Virus record (IMG/VR): IMGVR_UViG_3300005964_000055
Span: 1-5,855 of that record
Direction: 5' to 3' (one strand)
DNA: 5,855 bases
The notes beneath the pieces were generated by a model. The model did no database searches. It was not told the DNA's origin and saw nothing but the letters and a program-made list of their open reading frames with translations. This document shows positions 1 through 5,855 of the stretch, piece by piece. The number at the start of each line of letters is the position of its first letter. Within the stretch, counting starts at the first letter, position 1. A program made the position numbers and the translations under genes.

Positions 1-479
1 ACAATTATTTGTAAAATTGCTAATCCGTCTACTAAATATGCATAAACTGACTTTTTAACTACGCTAAGTAAAGCAATAGCGAATAATAGTTCTGAAATTA
101 AAAACTTATCAAATATTGGAATATTGAAATTTAACAATACAAGGTTTGATAATACTGGAGCTGAAAATACATAAATTAACCAGAGCGAAATTCCAAAAAT
201 TGTATAAAACTTTGGAGAAAATGAAGATCTAATGTATGCATAATCTCCTCCATTTAATGGAATTTTCTTAGTCAGTAAATAATACATTACAAGTAACGGA
301 ATTCCAAAAGCAGAGCCTATAAGAACCGCAATTAATAAGTTTACATTTTTCATCATTTCAGAGACAAATAATGGATAACTTATTCCGCTCAAAATGCCCA
401 TGTACAAAAGATTTATAGAAAAAATATCTAATGCTGAAAAGCTTTTTATTACACCTGAACTTTCTCTTTTAAATTCCAT
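1..479 (-). CDS. APC-superfamily amino-acid permease, N-terminal 159 codons (3' end outside window)
   Basis: Manual translation from ATG at 479 is open to the window edge: MEFKRESSGVIKSFSALDIFSINLLYMGILSGISYPLF...LLIAVLIGSAFGIPLLVMYYLLTKKIPLNGGDYAYIRSSFSPKFYTIFGISLWLIYVFSAP...LQII. It has the archaeal APC N-terminal F-x-R-E-S-S-G motif, the P-x-x-GG-x-Y-x-Y-I loop after TM2 and several hydrophobic TM segments. Not in the ORF track because no stop codon lies in the window. Confidence 0.9.
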   Translation of the reverse strand, partial: MEFKRESSGVIKSFSALDIFSINLLYMGILSGISYPLFVSEMMKNVNLLIAVLIGSAFGIPLLVMYYLLTKKIPLNGGDYAYIRSSFSPKFYTIFGISLWLIYVFSAPVLSNLVLLNFNIPIFDKFLISELLFAIALLSVVKKSVYAYLVDGLAILQII

Positions 480-549: not shown

Positions 550-562
550 ATTTATCATATTG

Positions 563-940
563 ATGGCTAAGGAGTTTAAGTTAAGAGATAACGTGATAGT
601 TAAGATAAACGAAAATCAAGCTGAAGTAATTGTAGAAAATAAATATAAACTTTTTATAACTCTTTATGAGAATAATGTTACTGCTGAGTATAGTGATGTT
701 TCTATTTCAATTGAATATGATAAATTTGATGCTGAAAAATTAGCAAGAAAAATTTATGTTATAGTTCAACAATCTCATAGATTTTCAATTCTGTTAATTA
801 AAGAAGTTTTGGAATTGATTAAAATTAATAATATTTATGATGAAATAATAAGAGAGATAAAGAAGTTAAAGAGAGAAGAAAATATTGAAGCATTACTAAA
901 AATTTATGATTTTTTAAGTAAAAGTCAAAGCGTTAAATAA
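563..940 (+). CDS. Hypothetical viral protein, 125 aa (beta-rich N-half, charged helical C-half)
   Basis: The ORF track starts at TTG 560. The ATG at 563 is preferred because it fits the 22-23 nt GTC-to-start spacing. Composition is Lys/Glu/Ile-rich and no family motif was recognised. Confidence 0.75.
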   Translation: MAKEFKLRDNVIVKINENQAEVIVENKYKLFITLYENNVTAEYSDVSISIEYDKFDAEKLARKIYVIVQQSHRFSILLIKEVLELIKINNIYDEIIREIKKLKREENIEALLKIYDFLSKSQSVK

Positions 941-1978
941 TTGTTTTTTTACAGTTTCATAACTAAAGTTTTCTAACCAAAAGTTATAGTTTTCTTCAAT
1001 TTTTGCTTTATATTCATCCAATTTATCTAAAACTTCTAATATTTTATCTATAGCTTTATCCATACACATTTCTACACCATTTCCAATATGAATTGGATTA
1101 TTCCATAGAACTTCTGGAAATCTACAAGAATCAACTAGTAAATCTTTCAATTGAGGCGGAAAATATTCTTCCCATGCACCACCTTTAGTTGCAATTACTG
1201 GAATTTTGGAAACAAAAGCTTCTAAACCATTTAATTCAAAACTTCCACCTCTTGAAGTTAGTAAATACAAATCTGAAATTCTATACATTTTAACTATATT
1301 ATCAAAATCAGTATTTCCAGTCAAATTAAACATTCTCAAATCTTGAAAATCTGTTCTCGGTCCACCTGATTTTACTAGAAAATAAACATCATTCCTTTCT
1401 TTTTGTATTTCTCTAGCTATATTATGAAATAAATCAGCTCCTTTACGAAAATCAGAATGCCATAACGAAATCATTATTAGTTTTATTTTCTTTTCATTTT
1501 TAACTTTTTCAATATATTTAACTTGTTCATCAACTTTTAACTCATTATCTTTTGCTAATAATCTAGAATTGAAATTATGAACAACTTTAAAAATTGGAAT
1601 TTTTAATCCAGAATTTTTAAAAGCGTTTAATGTCCATTCAGAATTTCCAATTAGTCTATCCGCATAGTTATTAGCATAATCTATGAATTTTTCTGAAATT
1701 CTATCACTGTCAGCTACTTCAACTCCAATAATTGCTGAAACTCGGCTTCTATATTGCTCAAAAAATGAGAATTCAACTTTTCCCCAGTGCCACATTGAAT
1801 AAAAGAACGGATGAATTATAGAAATTGGATATCTGAATGGAGTAAATTGATAAAATGATAGAGCTGGAATTTCGTAAACTGTATATTTTTCTTTTAACAT
1901 TTTTATATGTTGTAAAGCAATAAATTTAAAAGAAACATCATGATGTTGAGGATAAACGTAATAAATTATATTTGACAT
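914..1978 (-). CDS. GT-B fold glycosyltransferase, GT4/Glycos_transf_1-like (resembles the ~356-aa rudiviral GT)
   Basis: Motifs D-R-L-I-G-N-S-E-W-T, V-V-H-N, R-K-G-A-D-L-F (aa 178), Y-R-I-S-D-L-Y-L-L-T-S-R-G-G-S-F-E-L-N-G-L-E-A and P-V-I-A-T-K-G-G-A-W-E-E, plus a C-terminal F-S-Y-E helix, all typical of GT4 C-terminal domains. Confidence 0.93.
   Translation of the reverse strand: MSNIIYYVYPQHHDVSFKFIALQHIKMLKEKYTVYEIPALSFYQFTPFRYPISIIHPFFYSMWHWGKVEFSFFEQYRSRVSAIIGVEVADSDRISEKFIDYANNYADRLIGNSEWTLNAFKNSGLKIPIFKVVHNFNSRLLAKDNELKVDEQVKYIEKVKNEKKIKLIMISLWHSDFRKGADLFHNIAREIQKERNDVYFLVKSGGPRTDFQDLRMFNLTGNTDFDNIVKMYRISDLYLLTSRGGSFELNGLEAFVSKIPVIATKGGAWEEYFPPQLKDLLVDSCRFPEVLWNNPIHIGNGVEMCMDKAIDKILEVLDKLDEYKAKIEENYNFWLENFSYETVKKQLFNALTFT
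941..950 (+). terminator. Putative archaeal oligo-T terminator
   Basis: ttgttttttt immediately follows the TAA at 938-940. It also lies inside the opposite-strand CDS (Lys codons), so it may be incidental. Confidence 0.4.
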
Positions 1979-1985
1979 TTTATGT

Positions 1986-1990
1986 TCACC
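1986..1990 (-). promoter_or_regulatory. Shine-Dalgarno GGTGA for the GT-B gene, overlapping the GT-A stop codon
   Basis: Minus strand: TGG TGA acataaa ATG. The Sulfolobales-type SD is 7 nt before the ATG at 1978. Confidence 0.7.
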
Positions 1991-2591
1991 AGCTAATTAA
2001 TACAAATTCTGGAATATGTTTAAATACTTGATTTATATCATTCAAAGTAAATTCCATTCTTTTTTCGCCTTCTGGAATTTTTACATAATGTATAGTTCCT
2101 AATTTTAATATATTTATAGGCAAAATATGGTCATGTAGAAATATATCTATTGGAAAATATTCATAATATTGTTTATCAAGATAGACATTTAATATAATTT
2201 CAAAAATTGCAATATGTTTTTTATTAAAAATGTAATTTGTTCCAGAACAAAACGGTCTAATCTCGTTAGCCCAGTCATAATAAAGCCAATAACATAAAGT
2301 CAAAATTCTATTTTGTGGATCAATATTCCTAATTTTTGGAACAATTAGATCACTATCAATTATCGCAAATATATCATCATCTTGATCTTTTGCTATATCT
2401 AGAATTTTCAATAATTGTTTCGCAATTCTGACCCATCTTATATTACTATTTGTTTCATTCCAGATAATTTTATCTGAATATTTATCGATTAACTGGGGAG
2501 TTAAATCATTAAAAGTTTTATCTACTACAACATAGTCAAAATCCAGTTCTTCTAAATGCTTTGTAAATCCAACAAAAGTAAAGATTTTCAT
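1986..2591 (-). CDS. GT-A fold (GT2-like) glycosyltransferase with DxD motif
   Basis: N-terminal strand plus V-V-V-D, hydrophobic F-A-I-I-D-S-D-L (DxD at aa 79-81, nt 2357-2349), C-S-G-T-N-Y-I-F strand, acidic P-I-D and a late H-Y. Size and layout match small crenarchaeal-virus GT-A enzymes. Confidence 0.8.
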   Translation of the reverse strand: MKIFTFVGFTKHLEELDFDYVVVDKTFNDLTPQLIDKYSDKIIWNETNSNIRWVRIAKQLLKILDIAKDQDDDIFAIIDSDLIVPKIRNIDPQNRILTLCYWLYYDWANEIRPFCSGTNYIFNKKHIAIFEIILNVYLDKQYYEYFPIDIFLHDHILPINILKLGTIHYVKIPEGEKRMEFTLNDINQVFKHIPEFVLISW

Positions 2592-2604
2592 AATTATTTC
2601 TCAA

Positions 2605-2630
2605 GTTCATGACAAATTAAAATATTGCTA
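2605..2630 (-). promoter_or_regulatory. Promoter of the glycosyltransferase pair: TTTTAATTT + GTCATGAAC
   Basis: Minus strand: gcaataTTTTAATTT-GTCATGAAC-ttgagaaataatt-ATG. G of GTC at 2613, 22 nt before the ATG at 2591, the same spacing as the permease promoter. Confidence 0.7.
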
Positions 2631-2722
2631 ATTCGTAACGAGAACAATTAGATCAAGCTATATACATAATATGATATATAAGTTATGAGTTTATTTTTAC
2701 TACAATTTAAGTATATAAACAT

Positions 2723-3646
2723 ATGAGCATTACATATGCTTCAATCTCAAGTTTATTAGCTTCACCATTTCAGCGTTTAACATCTGGAATGTGGAACACT
2801 GCATCTTTGCTTTTAATTCAGCTTTATGAGACTGGTGGAAATGCTGTAACTTCAATTCTAAAAAATGGAAACTTAACAATTCCAGGTTCAATAAATGCTA
2901 GTTCTGGATTTTTCTATGATGAAATTTATATAGCTGGACAGCCAGTTTTAACAGAACTAGATCCAATTTATATTGCTGGATTTATAGCTACTGCAAATCA
3001 ACAAATAAATTTAATTTTATATTCAAATGAACAACTTTATTATTCAATTGTCAAACTTCCGCAAGAAATTTATGAAAAAATTATAGTTGCCGTGCCTACA
3101 GCTACTTCAGTTTTAACTAAAGATACAATTGCTTTATATGAGACAATTTATAATGTTGTAAATTATTTAATTTCAAATGTTCAACAAACTAGAACTATAA
3201 TTAGTCAAGATTTACAGAATTTCTATGTTTCATTTTATGAATTAGTAAGTTCAATAGCTAAAAGATTAGGTCTTTCGTTACAAAATGCGATTTATTTTAT
3301 TGCAGATTCTATAGCTTATACATTAACATATGTTTATTTAGCTACAGTTGGTTTAGCTAATACAATTAATAAACTTTCTTTGTATTTATCACCGCCAACT
3401 ATAGAAGGTTTACAATTAGATGTCTCTACAACACCGAGTCCACTTTATTCAGGCCCGTCTATAGAAACTGTAAGAATAATTCTTCAAAATCTGAGTAATT
3501 ATATAGTTTATATTGGGAATCAATTATACAATAATTTCCCAATTTTGCCAAATGATAGTATAGAAATTCATGTTAATAATCCTAGTAATATTTACGCATG
3601 GGCTACTGGAAAATGTCAAGTTTATGCTCTATTCGAGGTTGTATAG
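2723..3646 (+). CDS. 307-aa viral protein, putative fibre/minor structural protein (N-terminal motif, helical stalk, C-terminal beta-sandwich)
   Basis: Long clean ORF. N-terminal Q-R-L-T-S-G-M-W-N motif is shared with the large minus-strand protein, the middle is amphipathic/helical, and aa 224-307 are alternating beta-strands (RIILQNLSNYIVYIG...ILPNDSIEIHV...IYAWA). CDS status is secure; the function is inferred. Confidence 0.7.
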   Translation: MSITYASISSLLASPFQRLTSGMWNTASLLLIQLYETGGNAVTSILKNGNLTIPGSINASSGFFYDEIYIAGQPVLTELDPIYIAGFIATANQQINLILYSNEQLYYSIVKLPQEIYEKIIVAVPTATSVLTKDTIALYETIYNVVNYLISNVQQTRTIISQDLQNFYVSFYELVSSIAKRLGLSLQNAIYFIADSIAYTLTYVYLATVGLANTINKLSLYLSPPTIEGLQLDVSTTPSPLYSGPSIETVRIILQNLSNYIVYIGNQLYNNFPILPNDSIEIHVNNPSNIYAWATGKCQVYALFEVV

Positions 3647-3657
3647 AGTTGATAAAA

Positions 3658-3828
3658 ATGTGGAATTATTGGATAGAAAAATTTAGAGAATGTGTAGATT
3701 TTGTTTGTTTAAACAATACAGTTCATGAATGTTATGAAATTTGTGATAAAAAAGAATTTCCAGATGATGTTAATGAATGTTATGCAATATGTAATGAACT
3801 TTATGAAGAAAATGCCAGATTTTTCTAA
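3658..3828 (+). CDS. 56-aa acidic Cys-rich microprotein (CX4C-X7-CX3C-X11-CX3C)
   Basis: Re-called start at ATG 3658 avoids a 49-nt overlap with the upstream gene and follows an SD-like GAGTTGAT (3646-3653). Protein: MWNYWIEKFRECVDFVCLNNTVHECYEICDKKEFPDDVNECYAICNELYEENARFF. It fills the gap between two co-oriented genes. Confidence 0.7.
   Translation: MWNYWIEKFRECVDFVCLNNTVHECYEICDKKEFPDDVNECYAICNELYEENARFF
3721..3795 (+). repeat. Imperfect in-frame 27-nt direct repeat, 48-nt spacing (VHECYEICD / VNECYAICN)
   Basis: gttcatgaatgttatgaaatttgtgat (3721-3747) vs gttaatgaatgttatgcaatatgtaat (3769-3795): 23/27 identical. Confidence 0.8.
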
Positions 3829-3830
3829 TT

Positions 3831-3837
3831 AGGTGAT
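3831..3837 (+). promoter_or_regulatory. Shine-Dalgarno AGGTGAT for the methyltransferase
   Basis: AGGTGAT-att-ATG(3841), complementary to the archaeal 16S 3' end and typical of internal operon genes in Sulfolobales. Confidence 0.75.
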
Positions 3838-3840
3838 ATT

Positions 3841-4317
3841 ATGGATTATAAAGATTATTTTTGTAAATTGGAATGTTGTTATTGGCACGAGTTTGATTTA
3901 GCTTATGGAAGACTTGATGTTAAAGATAGAACAATTACGATAATTGGTAATGATTGTGGAAGTTCAGCTTTATATTTTTTACTTAAAGGAGCTAAGAGAA
4001 TTATCGGATATGAAAAAAGTGATAAGTTAAATAAAAGATTTAAAGAAAAAGTTTGCAAAGAATTTAATATTTGTGATAAAGTTGATGTAAATGGAGAATG
4101 GATTGGAAAAGAATATCCTGACACTGACATTTTCGTGATGGATTGTGAAGGATGTGAAGCCAAATTAGATTTTTCTCAATTGCAAAAATATAAGCAATAT
4201 TGTATTGCTATTCATGATTGGACAAAAAACAGATTTGATTTAATGCGAAAATTATATGGCACAGTTCTAACTTTTATAACTGATGATAATAAAGAATTTG
4301 TATTTTGTAAGTTATGA
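3841..4317 (+). CDS. SAM-dependent methyltransferase, FkbM-like (resembles the 158-aa rudiviral MTase)
   Basis: Motif I region T-I-I-G-N-D-C-G-S-S-A-L-Y-F-L-L-K-G-A-K-R-I-I-G-Y-E and D-I-F-V-M-D-C-E-G-C-E match the FkbM pattern (D-x-G-A-x-x-G...V-x-A-F-E; l-K-i-D-x-E-G-x-E), followed by I-A-I-H. Confidence 0.85.
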   Translation: MDYKDYFCKLECCYWHEFDLAYGRLDVKDRTITIIGNDCGSSALYFLLKGAKRIIGYEKSDKLNKRFKEKVCKEFNICDKVDVNGEWIGKEYPDTDIFVMDCEGCEAKLDFSQLQKYKQYCIAIHDWTKNRFDLMRKLYGTVLTFITDDNKEFVFCKL

Positions 4318-4320
4318 AAA

Positions 4321-5855
4321 TTAGGCACATTGGTTATTTATAATTTTTGCATTTCCAGAAATATGTACTCCGCCAGAATTCTGTTTACAAATTAAATTTT
4401 CTATTACTGAATTATCATATAAATATATATTACCAACATTATCTTCTATATATAAAGTATTTATATATGCATTATTAAATAAAAATATACCGGCATTATT
4501 AAGTCCTATATTTACTAAATTTATACTTGTATAATCATATAAATTAATACTACCATTTTCAATTTGTATATTAATTTTATTAACAAATGAATTATTATAT
4601 AAATCCAATTCGCCATTATGAACTTGTATATTTATTGAATTTATATATGAATTATTATTAAGTTCTATATTTCCATTATTTGTTCCTATAATGAGAGAAT
4701 TTATAGATGCGTTATCTTGTAATTGTATAAATCCTTGATTTATGTATATTATAAAATTTGCAATTGTACCATAAATAGTGATAGATTGTAAATTATTATA
4801 AATTAGGAAATTTTTAATATAGACATTAGTTGGAATTGTAATATCAATTTGTGGACTTGAAATTAAAACATTTAGAAATGTATTAATTGAGTTTAATAAA
4901 TTATTAAATTCATTTCCAGTACAACTAAGCAAAAAGTATTGATTATGATTAAAAGTTAGAAATTGATTAACATTATAAACTATATCTGCAAATTGTGAAG
5001 CTTTTACTACTTGATCATGTTGAACATAAGAAAGTCTTTTTTGTAATTTTATGTTATTTTCATTTGCTAATTCTATGATAGCATTTATTAATTTATTGAA
5101 ATCGTTAGCTGTTAATGGAGTTCCTTTTTTTGCATGTAAAAGTGGAGTAAATGGATATGGTTGAAAGTTTTGGTAAAAGTTATAGAATTCATTGATTGCG
5201 GAATATATATATTCTGGATATGGAAATTGTATCAAATAATTAATATATTTATAAACACTGTAAGCTAAATATAAATCTTCTACGATTTCATTCCATAGTT
5301 TTGAAGATATTATAGAATATTTAGTTGGAGGAGATAATAATTTTGCAATTTGATAAACTGATTTACATGGTAAAACACATGGCAATAATTTAGAAGTTGA
5401 TTGACATGAAGTAGAAGAAGTAATAGAATATGATATATTATTACTATTTAGAAAATCTATTACTTGTTGATTTCCAATAAATGTAATTTCTGCTGTTAAA
5501 TATGCACCGAAATAAGGACATGTGGTCGGTGTTACGAATTCTACAGTTGTATTACTTGTAGGATAAAATGCTTGACAAGTTATAATTACTAATTGATTAT
5601 TTAGATCATTTAATGAAATTGCTGAAACATAATTTGAATTATTACATGTAGTTCCTATTGTATGACTTTGACCTTGATAGCATGCACAAAAATCTGTTTC
5701 AAATTGTCCATCAAAATTATTAATTATAGTTTCACTTTCAATTGACGAAATTGTTGTATTTTCAAAAGTCATAGTTAAATTTGGAACAATTTGACAACTT
5801 CCAACATTAATTAAATTAACTCCTTGTGGATAAATTAAAATTAACATGTAGTAGA
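4321..5855 (-). CDS. Large minor virion/fibre protein with C-terminal beta-solenoid, probably 5'-truncated (resembles the ~560-aa rudiviral structural protein)
   Basis: 508 aa from ATG 5847, but the frame stays open to the window edge (TAC TAC ATG), so the true start is probably upstream. It has a Cys/Thr-rich N-terminal region, four helical motif repeats and Asn/Ile-rich 20-aa repeats. Homology to the SIRV protein is from recalled synteny only. Confidence 0.75.
   Translation of the reverse strand, partial: YYMLILIYPQGVNLINVGSCQIVPNLTMTFENTTISSIESETIINNFDGQFETDFCACYQGQSHTIGTTCNNSNYVSAISLNDLNNQLVIITCQAFYPTSNTTVEFVTPTTCPYFGAYLTAEITFIGNQQVIDFLNSNNISYSITSSTSCQSTSKLLPCVLPCKSVYQIAKLLSPPTKYSIISSKLWNEIVEDLYLAYSVYKYINYLIQFPYPEYIYSAINEFYNFYQNFQPYPFTPLLHAKKGTPLTANDFNKLINAIIELANENNIKLQKRLSYVQHDQVVKASQFADIVYNVNQFLTFNHNQYFLLSCTGNEFNNLLNSINTFLNVLISSPQIDITIPTNVYIKNFLIYNNLQSITIYGTIANFIIYINQGFIQLQDNASINSLIIGTNNGNIELNNNSYINSINIQVHNGELDLYNNSFVNKINIQIENGSINLYDYTSINLVNIGLNNAGIFLFNNAYINTLYIEDNVGNIYLYDNSVIENLICKQNSGGVHISGNAKIINNQCA
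4345..4764 (-). repeat. Seven tandem 20-aa (60-nt) beta-solenoid repeats
   Basis: IANFIIYINQGFIQLQDNAS / INSLIIGTNNGNIELNNNSY / INSINIQVHNGELDLYNNSF / VNKINIQIENGSINLYDYTS / INLVNIGLNNAGIFLFNNAY / INTLYIEDNVGNIYLYDNSV / IENLICKQNSGGVHISGNAK: exact 20-aa period with no indels. Confidence 0.9.

What the first reader, a model, noticed from the sequence alone, without database searches (positions are those of the whole stretch)
914..5855. Candidate viral glycosylation plus glycan O-methylation module interleaved with fibre genes
Seen: a GT-A and a GT-B gene are divergently transcribed from a run encoding a fibre-like protein, a Cys microprotein and a methyltransferase, with a second fibre-like gene adjacent. 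The MTase has the FkbM-type D-x-E-G-x-E motif and lacks the DPPY/SPPY/NPPY or PC catalytic motifs of DNA methyltransferases. Known: FkbM-family enzymes are O-methyltransferases often found in surface-glycan loci, and rudiviral capsid protein has been reported to be glycosylated. Inference: the virus builds and O-methyl-caps its own glycan in the cytoplasm on capsid or fibre proteins (acid stability, receptor or superinfection effects), rather than using this enzyme for DNA methylation. An alternative is sugar modification of DNA.
Basis: partly seen in the sequence, partly recalled or inferred. Interest (0 to 1): 0.7.

Follow-up and report, generated by a model that had tools for sequence, protein, structure and literature searches.

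The report
Rudivirus glycosyltransferase pair with FkbM-like methyltransferase
This is the known central gene block of a Yellowstone Sulfolobus rod-shaped virus, and sequence and fold comparisons suggest, without chemical proof, that its small methyltransferase is a sugar-type O-methyltransferase working with the two neighbouring glycosyltransferases rather than a DNA methylase.

Summary
The window is a Usarudivirus (SIRV-type) fragment, 84-88% identical in DNA to SIRV8/9/10/V60.

- **Orthologues.** They correspond to SIRV2 gp44 (GT-B/GT4), gp43 (GT-A-like), gp42, gp41 (SAM methyltransferase) and gp40.
- **Methyltransferase family.** It has no direct Pfam hit. A profile of it reaches 703 relatives, 40 of 90 sampled hit Pfam FkbM (PF05050), and hhalign against such proteins gives 99.4%.
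- **Motifs.** D-C-E-G-C-E sits where DNA methylases carry DPPY or PC. There is no target-recognition domain.
- **Link to the glycosyltransferases.** The order methyltransferase, GT-A-like, GT-B is contiguous and co-directional in seven rudiviruses of four genera. An unrelated protein-primed-polymerase virus fuses homologues of this methyltransferase and this GT-B into one protein.
- **Background.** SIRV virion proteins are reported to be glycosylated.

The glycan O-methylation idea is therefore the best-supported reading, about 0.5, but no methyl sugar has been shown.

The 'fibre' label is unproven, because gp40 and gp42 are not among the established virion proteins. The Cys microprotein is a sporadic accessory insert. 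In betalipothrixviruses the methyltransferase lies away from the glycosyltransferase pair.

The genes are already annotated rudiviral core genes, so novelty is modest.

The parts
1..479 (-). 5' part of an amino-acid permease gene that runs off the window start. It lies outside the finding and is not part of the module.
   Evidence: The reverse-strand translation starts at 479. This is the position of the 'aminoacid permease' genes of SIRV8 and V60.
560..940 (+). 126-aa conserved hypothetical protein (SIRV8 ORF50 homologue). It converges on, and overlaps, the 3' end of the GT-B gene.
   Evidence: PHROG 21700, 2.4e-65. It is 92% identical to SIRV8. No function is assigned.
914..1978 (-). GT-B fold, GT4-type glycosyltransferase, 354 aa. 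Orthologue of SIRV2 gp44 / ORF356.
   Evidence: Pfam Glyco_trans_1_4 (38 bits, cut-off 27) and Glycos_transf_1 (32.6 bits, cut-off 26.4). PHROG 2170, 4e-109. It is 75% identical to SIRV2 and 55-69% identical to other genera.
1986..2591 (-). GT-A-like (DxD) protein, 201 aa. Orthologue of SIRV2 gp43 / ORF176. It lies 7 nt upstream of the GT-B gene, so the two are probably one operon.
   Evidence: The AF2 model has pLDDT 94.7. Foldseek finds the GT-A / NDP-sugar-transferase fold. D79-S-D81 is invariant. It occurs in all 42 rudiviral records and more weakly in 10 betalipothrixvirus records.
2592..2722 (.). 131-nt divergent intergenic region between the glycosyltransferase pair and the 307-aa/methyltransferase run. 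It is AT-rich with TATA-like runs on both sides.
   Evidence: Read directly from the sequence. Promoter function is inferred and was not tested.
2723..3646 (+). 307-aa acidic protein, poor in K/R and rich in S/T/N/Y. Orthologue of SIRV2 gp42 / ORF269. It has conserved N- and C-terminal parts and a middle of variable length. It is possibly a virion or surface protein, but this is not proven.
   Evidence: PHROG 7221, 4e-159. Alignment A5. pI 4.6 and K+R 3.6%. Homologues are found in SIRV2, SRV and SBRV1 only among the loci inspected. There is no Pfam, NCBIfam or PDB match.
3658..3828 (+). 56-aa Cys-rich microprotein with the pattern C-x4-C-x7-C-x3-C-x11-C-x3-C, built on an internal duplication. 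The longest ORF starts at 3598. It is an accessory insert.
   Evidence: It is present in the three V-isolates at 75-78% amino-acid identity, and in SBRV1 at another locus (residues 21-74, 50% identity, 2e-5). It is absent from SIRV8, where the 307-aa gene and the methyltransferase gene abut. The 48-nt duplication is 3721-3750 / 3769-3798.
3841..4317 (+). Minimal (158 aa) FkbM-like class-I SAM methyltransferase. Orthologue of SIRV2 gp41 / ORF158a. Motif I is G36-x-D-C-G-S41, the motif II acid is E58, motif IV is D101-C-E-G-C-E106, and H125 is invariant.
4321..5847 (-). 508-aa acidic, Asn-rich protein ending in eight 20-residue beta-solenoid-type repeats (residues about 346-505). Homologue of SIRV2 gp40 / ORF309, with an extra Cys-rich N-terminal part of about 160 aa. 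It converges on the methyltransferase gene.
   Evidence: PHROG 10791, 5e-218. Pfam DUF4097 'toastrack' 1.3e-4, below the cut-off. Period-20 self-identity is 33%. It is 40% identical to SIRV2 gp40 and 24-29% identical to the gene next to the ORF1070-type fibre gene in SSRV1, ARV2, MRV1 and ARV1, and to SRV ORF533.

Best explanation
**What the window is**
The window is the conserved central block of a Yellowstone SIRV-type rudivirus.

**The enzymes**
Three enzymes in it most likely act on one glycan:
- a GT4-type GT-B glycosyltransferase (354 aa);
- a small GT-A-like DxD protein (201 aa);
- a stripped-down FkbM-type SAM methyltransferase (158 aa).

**Proposed mechanism**
Rudiviral virions assemble in the cytoplasm and leave through pyramid portals. 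They therefore never meet the host's extracellular oligosaccharyltransferase. The virus supplies its own cytoplasmic glycosyltransferases to decorate virion proteins. The methyltransferase then transfers a methyl group from SAM to a sugar hydroxyl, either on the finished glycan or on its nucleotide-sugar precursor. The invariant His125 and the acidic D-x-E-G-x-E loop after strand 4 would form the acceptor site.

**What is shown here**
- Gene identities.
- Predicted folds.
- FkbM-superfamily relationship.
- Absence of DNA-methylase motifs.
- Conserved methyltransferase/GT-A-like/GT-B gene order.
- A methyltransferase+GT-B fusion in another virus.

**What is taken from the literature**
SIRV major and one minor capsid protein are glycosylated.

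**What is inferred**
- The acceptor is a sugar.
- The product sits on virion proteins.
- The 307-aa and 508-aa acid-adapted proteins are surface proteins and possible substrates.
For: **Family**
- The profile of 26 Ligamenvirales methyltransferases finds 703 proteins at E <= 1e-3 among 1.84 billion representatives.
- 130 of the best 150 keep D-x-E-G-x-E, and 107 of those read DCEGCE.
- 40 of 90 sampled relatives hit Pfam PF05050 (FkbM), best 6.9e-18. The next families (FtsJ, TRM5) are far weaker.
- hhalign of the viral profile against ten PF05050-positive proteins gives 99.4%, E 3.6e-21.

**Fold**
- The AF2 model has pLDDT 96 and shows a bare seven-stranded Rossmann core with no extra domain.

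**Gene order**
- The order methyltransferase, about 196-232 aa GT-A-like gene, GT-B is contiguous and co-directional in SSRV1, MRV1, ARV2, ARV3, SMRV1, SBRV1 and SRV. Gaps are at most 25 nt or the genes overlap.
- In SMRV1 the trio keeps together although its flanks differ.

**Fusions**
- P0143 is a 452-aa protein on a 21-kb contig that also carries a protein-primed polymerase B, Cas4, ThyA and dUTPase.
- It joins a homologue of this methyltransferase (34% identity, 5e-22) to a homologue of this GT-B (26% identity over 187 aa, 1e-11).
- Other relatives are fused to GT1, GT2 or a polysaccharide pyruvyl transferase.

**Neighbourhood in other viruses**
- In 31 other IMG/VR viral loci with FkbM-like methyltransferases, 26 of the methyltransferase-bearing ORFs hit PF05050. 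Between 4 (if the family counts overlap) and 9 carry a glycosyltransferase domain.
- As a rough count, at least 17 of 101 ORFs within two genes are glycosyltransferases, against 4 of 79 ORFs four or more genes away. Fisher p = 0.018.

**Substrate exists**
- SIRV capsid proteins are glycosylated and periodate inactivates virions (PMC9319562).

**Precedent**
- PBCV-1 A064R domain 3 2-O-methylates the terminal rhamnose of the capsid glycan (PMC9614988).
Against: - The window protein, and all 26 aligned relatives, give no direct Pfam, NCBIfam or PDB-sequence hit to any methyltransferase family.
- Foldseek is not family-specific. Its top PDB hits are rRNA m6A methyltransferases (METTL5, PH1948; E 4e-9, TM about 0.6, rmsd 5-6 A), followed by BpsA, TehB, Dim1 and PrmA.
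- FkbM-family membership does not fix the acceptor. FkbM itself methylates a macrolide (my own knowledge).
- The glutamate of the family's E-x-H strand is Ala in the viral proteins.
- All three genes are rudiviral core genes, so co-occurrence alone says little.
- In SIRVs the trio is split by an inversion. In ARV1 it is scattered.
- In betalipothrixviruses the methyltransferase lies about 10 kb from the GT-A-like/GT-B pair, and in AFV7 it follows a dual-specificity phosphatase.
- One relative (P0185) carries the C-terminal piece of a C5 DNA methylase.
- Two viral neighbours are TET-associated, DNA-type glycosyltransferases.
- No O-methyl sugar has been reported for rudiviral virions in the papers I could read.
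Confidence: 0.5

Rival explanations
1. The 158-aa enzyme is a nucleic-acid methyltransferase. It would either methylate viral DNA against host restriction or methylate an RNA (rRNA, tRNA or viral transcripts). Its position beside the glycosyltransferases would be synteny of core genes only.
For: - The top Foldseek PDB hits are RNA m6A methyltransferases, METTL5 and PH1948, and then Dim1.
- Relatives give weak cross-hits to TRM5/TYW2 and FtsJ.
- One relative carries a C5 DNA-methylase fragment.
- In AFV7 the gene follows a DSP-type phosphatase, a fold also used by RNA triphosphatases (the fold use is my own knowledge).
- The gene is shared horizontally among Sulfolobales virus families, as anti-restriction genes often are.
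Against: - There is no (D/N/S)PP(Y/F/W) motif and no PC or ENV motif. The motif IV position holds D-C-E-G-C-E.
- The 158 residues form only the Rossmann core, with no target-recognition or RNA-binding domain.
- The structural matches are generic: TM about 0.6, rmsd 5-6 A, 10-16% identity.
- The homology signal goes to FkbM, which is far stronger than to any RNA-methyltransferase family.
- Fusion partners are glycan enzymes in five cases and a DNA-methylase fragment in one.
Confidence: 0.15
2. It is a protein methyltransferase, acting on lysine, arginine, the N-terminus or a carboxyl group. It would modify capsid or host proteins, in line with the extensive lysine methylation of Sulfolobales proteomes.
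For: - PrmA, METTL21A/D, PRMT and FAM86A are among the Foldseek hits.
- Eight relatives give weak PrmA hits.
Against: - The matches are as generic as for the RNA enzymes.
- No protein-methyltransferase family is reached by sequence.
- FkbM-type motif IV and the invariant His fit O-methylation of a hydroxyl (inference).
- The fusions and the conserved gene order point to glycan enzymes.
Confidence: 0.12
3. It is an FkbM-type O-methyltransferase, but for a substrate unrelated to the two glycosyltransferases, such as a small metabolite, a lipid head group or a host surface glycan. The glycosyltransferases would act alone on virion proteins, and the 201-aa protein might even be a sugar nucleotidyltransferase rather than a transferase to an acceptor.
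For: - FkbM-family acceptors are chemically diverse (my own knowledge).
- The methyltransferase is detached from the glycosyltransferase pair in betalipothrixviruses, and SEV1 and SMV1 share it.
- The top Foldseek hits of the 201-aa model include the nucleotidyltransferases KdsB, IspD and GMPP.
Against: - The trio is kept as a tight co-directional unit in seven rudiviruses, even where the flanks differ.
- There is a direct methyltransferase+GT-B fusion in another virus.
- The 201-aa protein has an invariant DSD after strand 4. It has no G-x-G-x-R nucleotidyltransferase loop at its N-terminus (the motif rule is my own knowledge).
Confidence: 0.18

Closest known systems
SIRV2 gp40-gp44 (ORF309, ORF158a, ORF269, ORF176, ORF356) and the same block in SIRV4-11 and V60
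   Same: They are orthologous gene for gene and in the same order and orientation. Amino-acid identity to SIRV2 is 80% for the methyltransferase, 75% for GT-B, 66% for the GT-A-like protein, 63% for the 307-aa protein and 40% for the 508-aa protein. The DNA is 84-88% identical to Yellowstone SIRVs.
   Different: The window carries the 56-aa Cys gene between the 307-aa gene and the methyltransferase gene. Only the V-isolates share it. The gp40 homologue is about 200 aa longer than in SIRV2. None of these proteins has a tested function.
FkbM-family methyltransferases (Pfam PF05050). The related model PF05575, V. cholerae RfbT, is the O-antigen terminal-sugar methylase.
   Same: Both have the class-I Rossmann fold, motif I D-x-G-(A/S)-x-x-G, motif IV D-x-E-G-x-E after strand 4, and an invariant His on strand 5. 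hhalign gives 99.4%. Such enzymes commonly sit in, or are fused to, glycan-synthesis genes. One of the 31 methyltransferase-bearing viral ORFs hit PF05575.
   Different: The viral protein is much shorter, 158 aa against about 250-300, and lacks the insert between strands 3 and 4. It has Ala for the Glu of E-x-H. It has Cys at both x positions of motif IV. It is not detected by the Pfam model itself.
Chlorovirus PBCV-1 A064R (GT-A domain 1, rhamnosyltransferase domain 2, methyltransferase domain 3) with A061L
   Same: Both are virus-encoded, cytoplasmic and host-independent glycosylation of capsid protein, with a SAM methyltransferase that methylates the terminal sugar (PMC9614988). A64R domain 1 (PDB 2p72) is among the fold matches of the 201-aa model.
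   Different: PBCV-1 is a eukaryotic giant virus and its enzymes are fused into one chain. Its activities are proven biochemically. I did not test sequence relatedness of the methyltransferase domains.
P0143, a methyltransferase+GT-B fusion protein of an uncultured virus with a protein-primed polymerase (locus L013)
   Same: It holds homologues of both window enzymes in one polypeptide: methyltransferase 34% identity and GT-B 26% identity.
   Different: It comes from a different virus type, with a B-family protein-primed polymerase, Cas4 and ThyA. No GT-A-like partner was recognised next to it. Its function is unknown.

Membership tests
FkbM-type methyltransferase (Pfam PF05050 Methyltransf_21) | Match to the family model above its gathering score | tested here: not met
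   There is no PF05050 hit at E <= 1 for the window protein, or at E <= 10 for any of the 26 Ligamenvirales homologues.
FkbM-type methyltransferase (Pfam PF05050 Methyltransf_21) | Homology to bona fide members by profile methods | tested here: met
   The profile search reaches proteins that score PF05050 above the cut-off. Examples are P0259 (65 bits), P0250 (59 bits) and P0255 (56 bits), found at E about 1e-7 in 1.84 billion sequences. 40 of 90 sampled relatives are positive. hhalign gives 99.4%, E 3.6e-21.
FkbM-type methyltransferase (Pfam PF05050 Methyltransf_21) | Motif IV D-x-E-G-x-E after strand 4, and a conserved His on strand 5 | tested here: met
   D101-C-E-G-C-E106 and H125 are invariant in 26 viral sequences. 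E106 and H125 are invariant in 90 distant ones. Their placement relative to the strands comes from the AF2 secondary structure.
FkbM-type methyltransferase (Pfam PF05050 Methyltransf_21) | O-methylation of a hydroxyl on a sugar or polyketide | not testable with these tools
   This needs an enzyme assay or glycan mass spectrometry.
DNA methyltransferases (N6A/N4C amino-methyltransferases; C5 methyltransferases) | Catalytic motif IV (D/N/S)PP(Y/F/W), or PC together with ENV | tested here: not met
   None is present in the 158-aa sequence or in the best 150 relatives.
DNA methyltransferases (N6A/N4C amino-methyltransferases; C5 methyltransferases) | A target-recognition domain in addition to the Rossmann core | tested here: not met
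   The AF2 model is a bare seven-stranded core of 158 residues.
GT-A fold glycosyltransferase (the 201-aa protein) | GT-A (NDP-sugar transferase) fold | tested here: met
   The AF2 model has pLDDT 94.7. There are 74 PDB matches at E <= 1e-3, led by SpsA, alpha3GalT, BoGT6a, SunS, A64R domain 1 and the fold-sharing nucleotidyltransferases. Scores are modest, TM 0.4-0.5.
GT-A fold glycosyltransferase (the 201-aa protein) | DxD metal / NDP-binding motif at the end of the central strand | tested here: met
   D79-S80-D81 is invariant in 16 sequences from six genera and follows strand 74-79.
GT-A fold glycosyltransferase (the 201-aa protein) | Sequence match to a curated glycosyltransferase family | tested here: not met
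   Pfam GT2 gives E 0.13 (12.6 bits, cut-off 23.3). There are no NCBIfam or PDB-sequence hits. The PHROG family is labelled unknown function.
GT-B fold, GT4-type glycosyltransferase (the 354-aa protein) | Match to Glycos_transf_1 / Glyco_trans_1_4 above the gathering score | tested here: met
   It scores 32.6 bits against 26.4, and 38 bits against 27. PHROG 2170 'glycosyltransferase' gives 4e-109.
Rudiviral virion (fibre) proteins | Homology to a protein shown to be in virions (SIRV2 Gp26, Gp33, Gp38, Gp39) | tested here: not met
   The 307-aa and 508-aa proteins match SIRV2 gp42 and gp40, not the listed virion proteins (PMC5537682). Only their composition (pI 4.6-4.7, K+R about 3.5%) and the 20-residue repeats suggest surface exposure.

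The most novel reading that the evidence does not exclude
Rudiviruses, and through gene sharing other Sulfolobales viruses, carry a self-contained cytoplasmic pathway that glycosylates virion proteins and caps the glycan with an O-methyl group. The methyltransferase would be a previously uncharacterised minimal 'DCEGCE' clade of FkbM-like enzymes, about 160 aa long and also widespread in metagenomes, whose two motif-IV cysteines have a catalytic, metal-binding or disulfide role. This would be the first glycan O-methylation system described for an archaeal virus. It would also give a handle on why these virions survive about 80 C and pH 3, or on how they bind glycosylated host pili.
Probability: 0.35. 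Interest if true: 0.6.

Novelty: new member of a known kind. Interest (0 to 1): 0.38.

Why it matters
Rudiviruses are the best-studied model for viruses of hyperthermophilic archaea. Even so, the role of their core methyltransferase and of two of their three glycosyltransferases has never been tested.

Two findings turn a generic 'SAM-dependent methyltransferase' label into a specific hypothesis that can be falsified. First, the enzyme belongs with sugar-type FkbM O-methyltransferases. Second, it is coupled to the glycosyltransferases, both by gene order in rudiviruses and by fusion in another virus.

The test is feasible: delete SIRV2 gp41 with the existing genome-editing method, then compare virion glycans and virion stability.

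If the hypothesis holds, it extends virus-encoded glycan tailoring, known so far from giant eukaryotic viruses, to archaeal viruses. If it fails, the gene block remains an ordinary, already annotated part of a known virus family.

Tried and rejected
**Searches that gave nothing useful**
- Direct Pfam, NCBIfam and PDB-sequence searches of the methyltransferase and of its 26-sequence profile gave only noise. An example is repeated hits to de novo TIM barrels.
- Foldseek of the methyltransferase model against PDB and BFVD confirmed the class-I fold but could not name a family. The only close match was the SEV1 orthologue.
- A PDB profile search for the GT-A-like family gave no hit.
- PDB searches for the 307-aa and 508-aa proteins gave nothing beyond weak coiled-coil noise.
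- Rfam, tRNA and repeat scans of the window gave nothing beyond coding-repeat echoes.

**Context look-ups**
- The single genome-contig scan returned only SIRV-like contigs inside bacterial assemblies, which look like contamination. It gave no cellular context for the methyltransferase clade.
- Seven encoding-contig look-ups were made for distant relatives. All but P0143 lay on contigs of 1-3 kb with no informative neighbours.

**Literature**
- Two paper searches built on gp numbers returned unrelated phage papers, and one built on ORF names returned nothing.
- I found no paper in the library that links the rudiviral methyltransferase to FkbM, or that tests it.
- The SIRV2 genome-editing paper does not mention gp40-gp44.

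**Ideas considered and rejected**
- The 'putative protein acetyl transferase' label that the V60 record gives to the gp42 homologue has no support.
- The idea that the 76-aa ORF belongs to the module fails on its sporadic distribution.
- The idea that the 201-aa protein is a nucleotidyltransferase is unlikely. It has a DSD motif and no G-x-G-x-R loop.

**Procedural**
I re-ran it without that row.

Full report
**1. What the window is**

The 5,855-base window has about 25% G+C. It matches 19 Sulfolobus islandicus rod-shaped virus records at 84-88% DNA identity. The best matches are the Yellowstone isolates SIRV8, 9 and 10 and V60, genus Usarudivirus.

Gene order is the same as in those records. 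In the window it reads:
- the 5' part of an amino-acid permease gene (479-1, minus strand);
- a 126-aa conserved hypothetical gene (560-940, +);
- a 354-aa glycosyltransferase (914-1978, -);
- a 201-aa gene (1986-2591, -);
- a 131-nt divergent spacer;
- a 307-aa gene (2723-3646, +);
- a small Cys-rich ORF;
- a 158-aa methyltransferase (3841-4317, +);
- a convergent 508-aa gene (4321-5847, -).

In SIRV2 numbering the finding covers gp44, gp43, gp42, gp41 and gp40.

There are no tRNA genes, no Rfam families and no meaningful non-coding repeats.

**2. The two glycosyltransferases**

The 354-aa protein passes the Pfam gathering scores of both Glyco_trans_1_4 and Glycos_transf_1. It is a GT4-type GT-B enzyme.

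The 201-aa protein is 'unknown function' in PHROGs and misses every sequence library. An AlphaFold2 model built on 16 homologues is confident, pLDDT 94.7. It matches the GT-A / nucleotide-diphospho-sugar transferase fold: SpsA, alpha-1,3-galactosyltransferase, BoGT6a, SunS and the chlorovirus capsid glycosyltransferase A64R domain 1. It also matches the fold-sharing nucleotidyltransferases. Scores are modest, E from 1e-5 to 1e-3 and TM 0.4-0.5.

D79-S80-D81 is invariant across six genera and sits at the end of strand 74-79, where GT-A enzymes have their DxD motif. I accept 'GT-A-like' with that caveat.

The two genes are 7 nt apart on the same strand, so they are probably co-transcribed.

**3. 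The methyltransferase: fold and family**

The 158-aa protein is the orthologue of SIRV2 gp41 (ORF158a), at 80% identity. Homologues occur in all 42 rudiviral records and in 15 betalipothrixvirus records of the phage collection. Sulfolobus ellipsoid virus 1 has one too, at 46% identity. The ICTV profile of that virus also notes sharing with SMV1.

Neither the protein nor 25 relatives hit any Pfam methyltransferase family. A profile search of PDB sequences finds only noise.

The AlphaFold2 model has pLDDT 96. It is a bare seven-stranded class-I Rossmann methyltransferase core without any appended domain.

Foldseek confirms the fold but not a family. The top PDB hits are METTL5 and PH1948 (rRNA m6A enzymes), then BpsA, TehB, Dim1 and PrmA. 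All have TM about 0.6, rmsd 4-6 A and 10-16% identity.

Exhaustive profile searching settles the family:
- The 26-sequence profile finds 703 proteins at E <= 1e-3 among 1.84 billion representatives.
- 130 of the best 150 keep D-x-E-G-x-E, and 107 of them read D-C-E-G-C-E.
- Of 90 of these scanned against Pfam, 40 hit PF05050 (Methyltransf_21, the FkbM domain), best 6.9e-18. The next families, FtsJ and TRM5/TYW2, are far weaker and mostly below their cut-offs.
- hhalign of the viral profile against ten PF05050-positive proteins gives 99.4% probability, E 3.6e-21. Motif I, the motif II acid, D-C-E-G-C-E and the His of strand 5 are all aligned. The cellular proteins carry a long insert between strands 3 and 4 that the viral ones lack.

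This is a minimal, divergent FkbM-type enzyme.

It has no (D/N/S)PP(Y/F/W), no PC or ENV motif, and no target-recognition domain. That argues against a DNA methylase.

**4. Is the methyltransferase tied to the glycosyltransferases?**

Co-occurrence is complete within Rudiviridae. It carries little weight, because all three are core genes (bioRxiv 10.1101/2020.01.16.907410; PMC5454432).

Gene order is more informative:
- In SSRV1, MRV1, ARV2, ARV3, SMRV1, SBRV1 and SRV, from four genera, the three genes lie in the order methyltransferase, GT-A-like, GT-B. They are on one strand, with gaps of at most 25 nt or with overlaps.
- In SMRV1 the trio stays intact although its neighbours are different.
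- The SIRV arrangement seen in the window is an inversion of the glycosyltransferase pair, with gp42 in front of the methyltransferase.
- ARV1 is more scattered.

The strongest single item is a fusion. P0143 is a 452-aa protein on a 21-kb contig that also encodes a protein-primed polymerase B, Cas4, ThyA, a dUTPase and UDG. It joins a homologue of this methyltransferase (34% identity, 5e-22) to a homologue of this very GT-B (26% identity over 187 residues, 1e-11).

Other relatives are fused to GT1 (P0217), to GT2 (P0170, P0252) and to a polysaccharide pyruvyl transferase (P0219). One relative, P0185, carries a C-terminal fragment of a C5 DNA methylase.

I also looked at 31 IMG/VR loci with more distant FkbM-like methyltransferases:
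- 26 of the methyltransferase-bearing ORFs hit PF05050, and between 4 (if the family counts overlap) and 9 of them carry a glycosyltransferase domain.
- At least 17 of 101 ORFs within two genes are glycosyltransferases, against 4 of 79 ORFs four or more genes away. Fisher p = 0.018.
- This is a rough count from family tallies and naive ORF calls. It concerns the wider family.

Against the link:
- In betalipothrixviruses the GT-A-like and GT-B genes stay adjacent to each other, but the methyltransferase lies about 10 kb away.
- In AFV7 the methyltransferase follows a dual-specificity phosphatase.
- In SIFV2 it is one gene from a weak GT1-like gene.

**5. Is there a substrate?**

[quoted passage not shown] It also shows that periodate inactivates virions (PMC9319562).

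Rudiviral particles assemble in the cytoplasm and exit through pyramids, while the host oligosaccharyltransferase acts outside the membrane. This is established knowledge, not tested here. It makes virus-encoded cytoplasmic glycosyltransferases the natural source of these glycans.

I found no report of methylated sugars on them.

A proven precedent for a virus-encoded methyl 'cap' on a capsid glycan is PBCV-1 A064R domain 3 (PMC9614988).

**6. The 'fibre' genes and the microprotein**

The 508-aa protein is 40% identical to SIRV2 gp40 over its C-terminal two thirds. It is 24-29% identical to the gene that follows the ORF1070-type fibre gene in SSRV1, ARV2, MRV1 and ARV1, and to SRV ORF533. It ends in eight 20-residue repeats, with period-20 self-identity of 33% against a background of about 10%. 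It has a sub-threshold DUF4097 'toastrack' match. That fits a beta-solenoid.

The 307-aa protein matches SIRV2 gp42, SRV ORF286 and SBRV1 gp43. It has nearly invariant ends and a middle of variable length.

Both proteins are acidic, pI 4.6-4.7. Both are very poor in Lys+Arg, about 3.5% against 11-16% in the enzymes, and rich in Asn, Ser, Thr and Tyr. This fits exposure to acid outside the cell.

The established SIRV2 virion proteins are Gp26, Gp33, Gp38 and Gp39 (PMC5537682), not gp40 or gp42. 'Fibre-like' therefore remains a plausible guess.

The V60 record's label for the gp42 homologue, 'putative protein acetyl transferase', has no support.

The Cys ORF is conserved only in the three V-isolates and, from residue 21 onward, at an unrelated locus of SBRV1. 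SIRV8 lacks it altogether. It is best read as a 56-aa accessory gene (3658-3828) built on an internal duplication with two C-x3-C units. It is not part of the module.

**7. Verdict**

The enzyme is FkbM-type and not a DNA methylase by motif and architecture. Its association with the glycosyltransferases is backed by conserved operon structure and by a fusion protein. The acceptor, however, is inferred only, and the link is not universal across Ligamenvirales.

| Explanation | Probability |
|---|---|
| Sugar O-methylation acting with the glycosyltransferases | about 0.5 |
| An unrelated O-methylation | 0.18 |
| A nucleic-acid methyltransferase | 0.15 |
| A protein methyltransferase | 0.12 |

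The genes themselves are known, annotated rudiviral core genes. What is new is the specific family assignment and the supporting comparative evidence. Hence the novelty class is 'new member of a known kind', with moderate interest.

Noticed in passing
L019 (Planomonospora alba JCM 9373 contig, 31,951 bp), L020 (Paenochrobactrum glaciei), L021 (Streptomyces gamaensis): Three bacterial genome assemblies contain SIRV-like contigs that encode a methyltransferase 78% identical to the window's. One contig is about the length of a whole rudivirus genome. This looks like contamination of the assemblies, and it explains the NCBI label 'MULTISPECIES ... [Bacteria]' on P0382.
   Followed up: no
window 3658-3828 (longest ORF from 3598): This is a 56-aa Cys-rich microprotein made of an internal 48-nt duplication (3721-3750 / 3769-3798). 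It has two C-x3-C units plus a C-x4-C. It is present only in V60-type isolates, and at a different locus in SBRV1. Its function is unknown. It may be a disulfide-stabilised or metal-binding helical hairpin.
   Followed up: partly
window 4141-4158 (methyltransferase residues 101-106), and proteins P0121-P0270: 107 of the 150 best relatives of the methyltransferase keep both cysteines of D-C-E-G-C-E, whereas classic FkbM proteins have D-(I/V)-E-G-(A/G)-E. The viral proteins have eight conserved cysteines in 158 residues. The role of the motif-IV cysteines is unexplained.
   Followed up: partly
L003:5468-6063 (SIRV2 gp43 / ORF176): The last 38 or so residues of the GT-A-like protein match SIRV2 in a different reading frame from the first 173. 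The SIRV2 reference gene is therefore frameshifted, or mis-sequenced, near its 3' end.
   Followed up: no
L009:2937-3987 (SBRV1 gp45 and gp46): SBRV1 has two adjacent putative methyltransferases, of 182 and 158 aa, directly upstream of the GT-A-like/GT-B pair. The extra one is a weak structural match to the window enzyme (rank 24).
   Followed up: no
L010:4635-5387 (ARV1 gp31): In ARV1 the thymidylate synthase gene lies between the GT-A-like gene and the GT-B gene. This is an odd neighbour. It would deserve a look if DNA hypermodification were ever suspected.
   Followed up: no
L060:3079-3968 (AFV7 gp52 and gp53): In AFV7 the orthologous methyltransferase directly follows a dual-specificity phosphatase (Pfam DSPc, 8e-10), in a co-directional run of unannotated genes. 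This context is different from the one in rudiviruses.
   Followed up: partly
L001:6831-7634 (V60 record OM401713): The deposited annotation calls the gp42 homologue 'putative protein acetyl transferase'. No Pfam or NCBIfam acetyltransferase model matches the window orthologue.
   Followed up: yes
window 4321-5847; residues 1 to about 160 of the 508-aa protein: The Usarudivirus gp40 homologue has a Cys-rich N-terminal extension that is absent from SIRV2 gp40 (309 aa). Identity to SIRV8 also drops in the last 100 residues, to 47%. This may be a fast-evolving, host-interaction-type region.
   Followed up: no
IMG/VR loci L025-L059: Two TET-associated glycosyltransferases (Pfam TAGT, DNA base glycosylation) appear among the neighbours of FkbM-like methyltransferases in other viruses. 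Five of the methyltransferase-bearing ORFs are fused to radical-SAM/SPASM domains.
   Followed up: no
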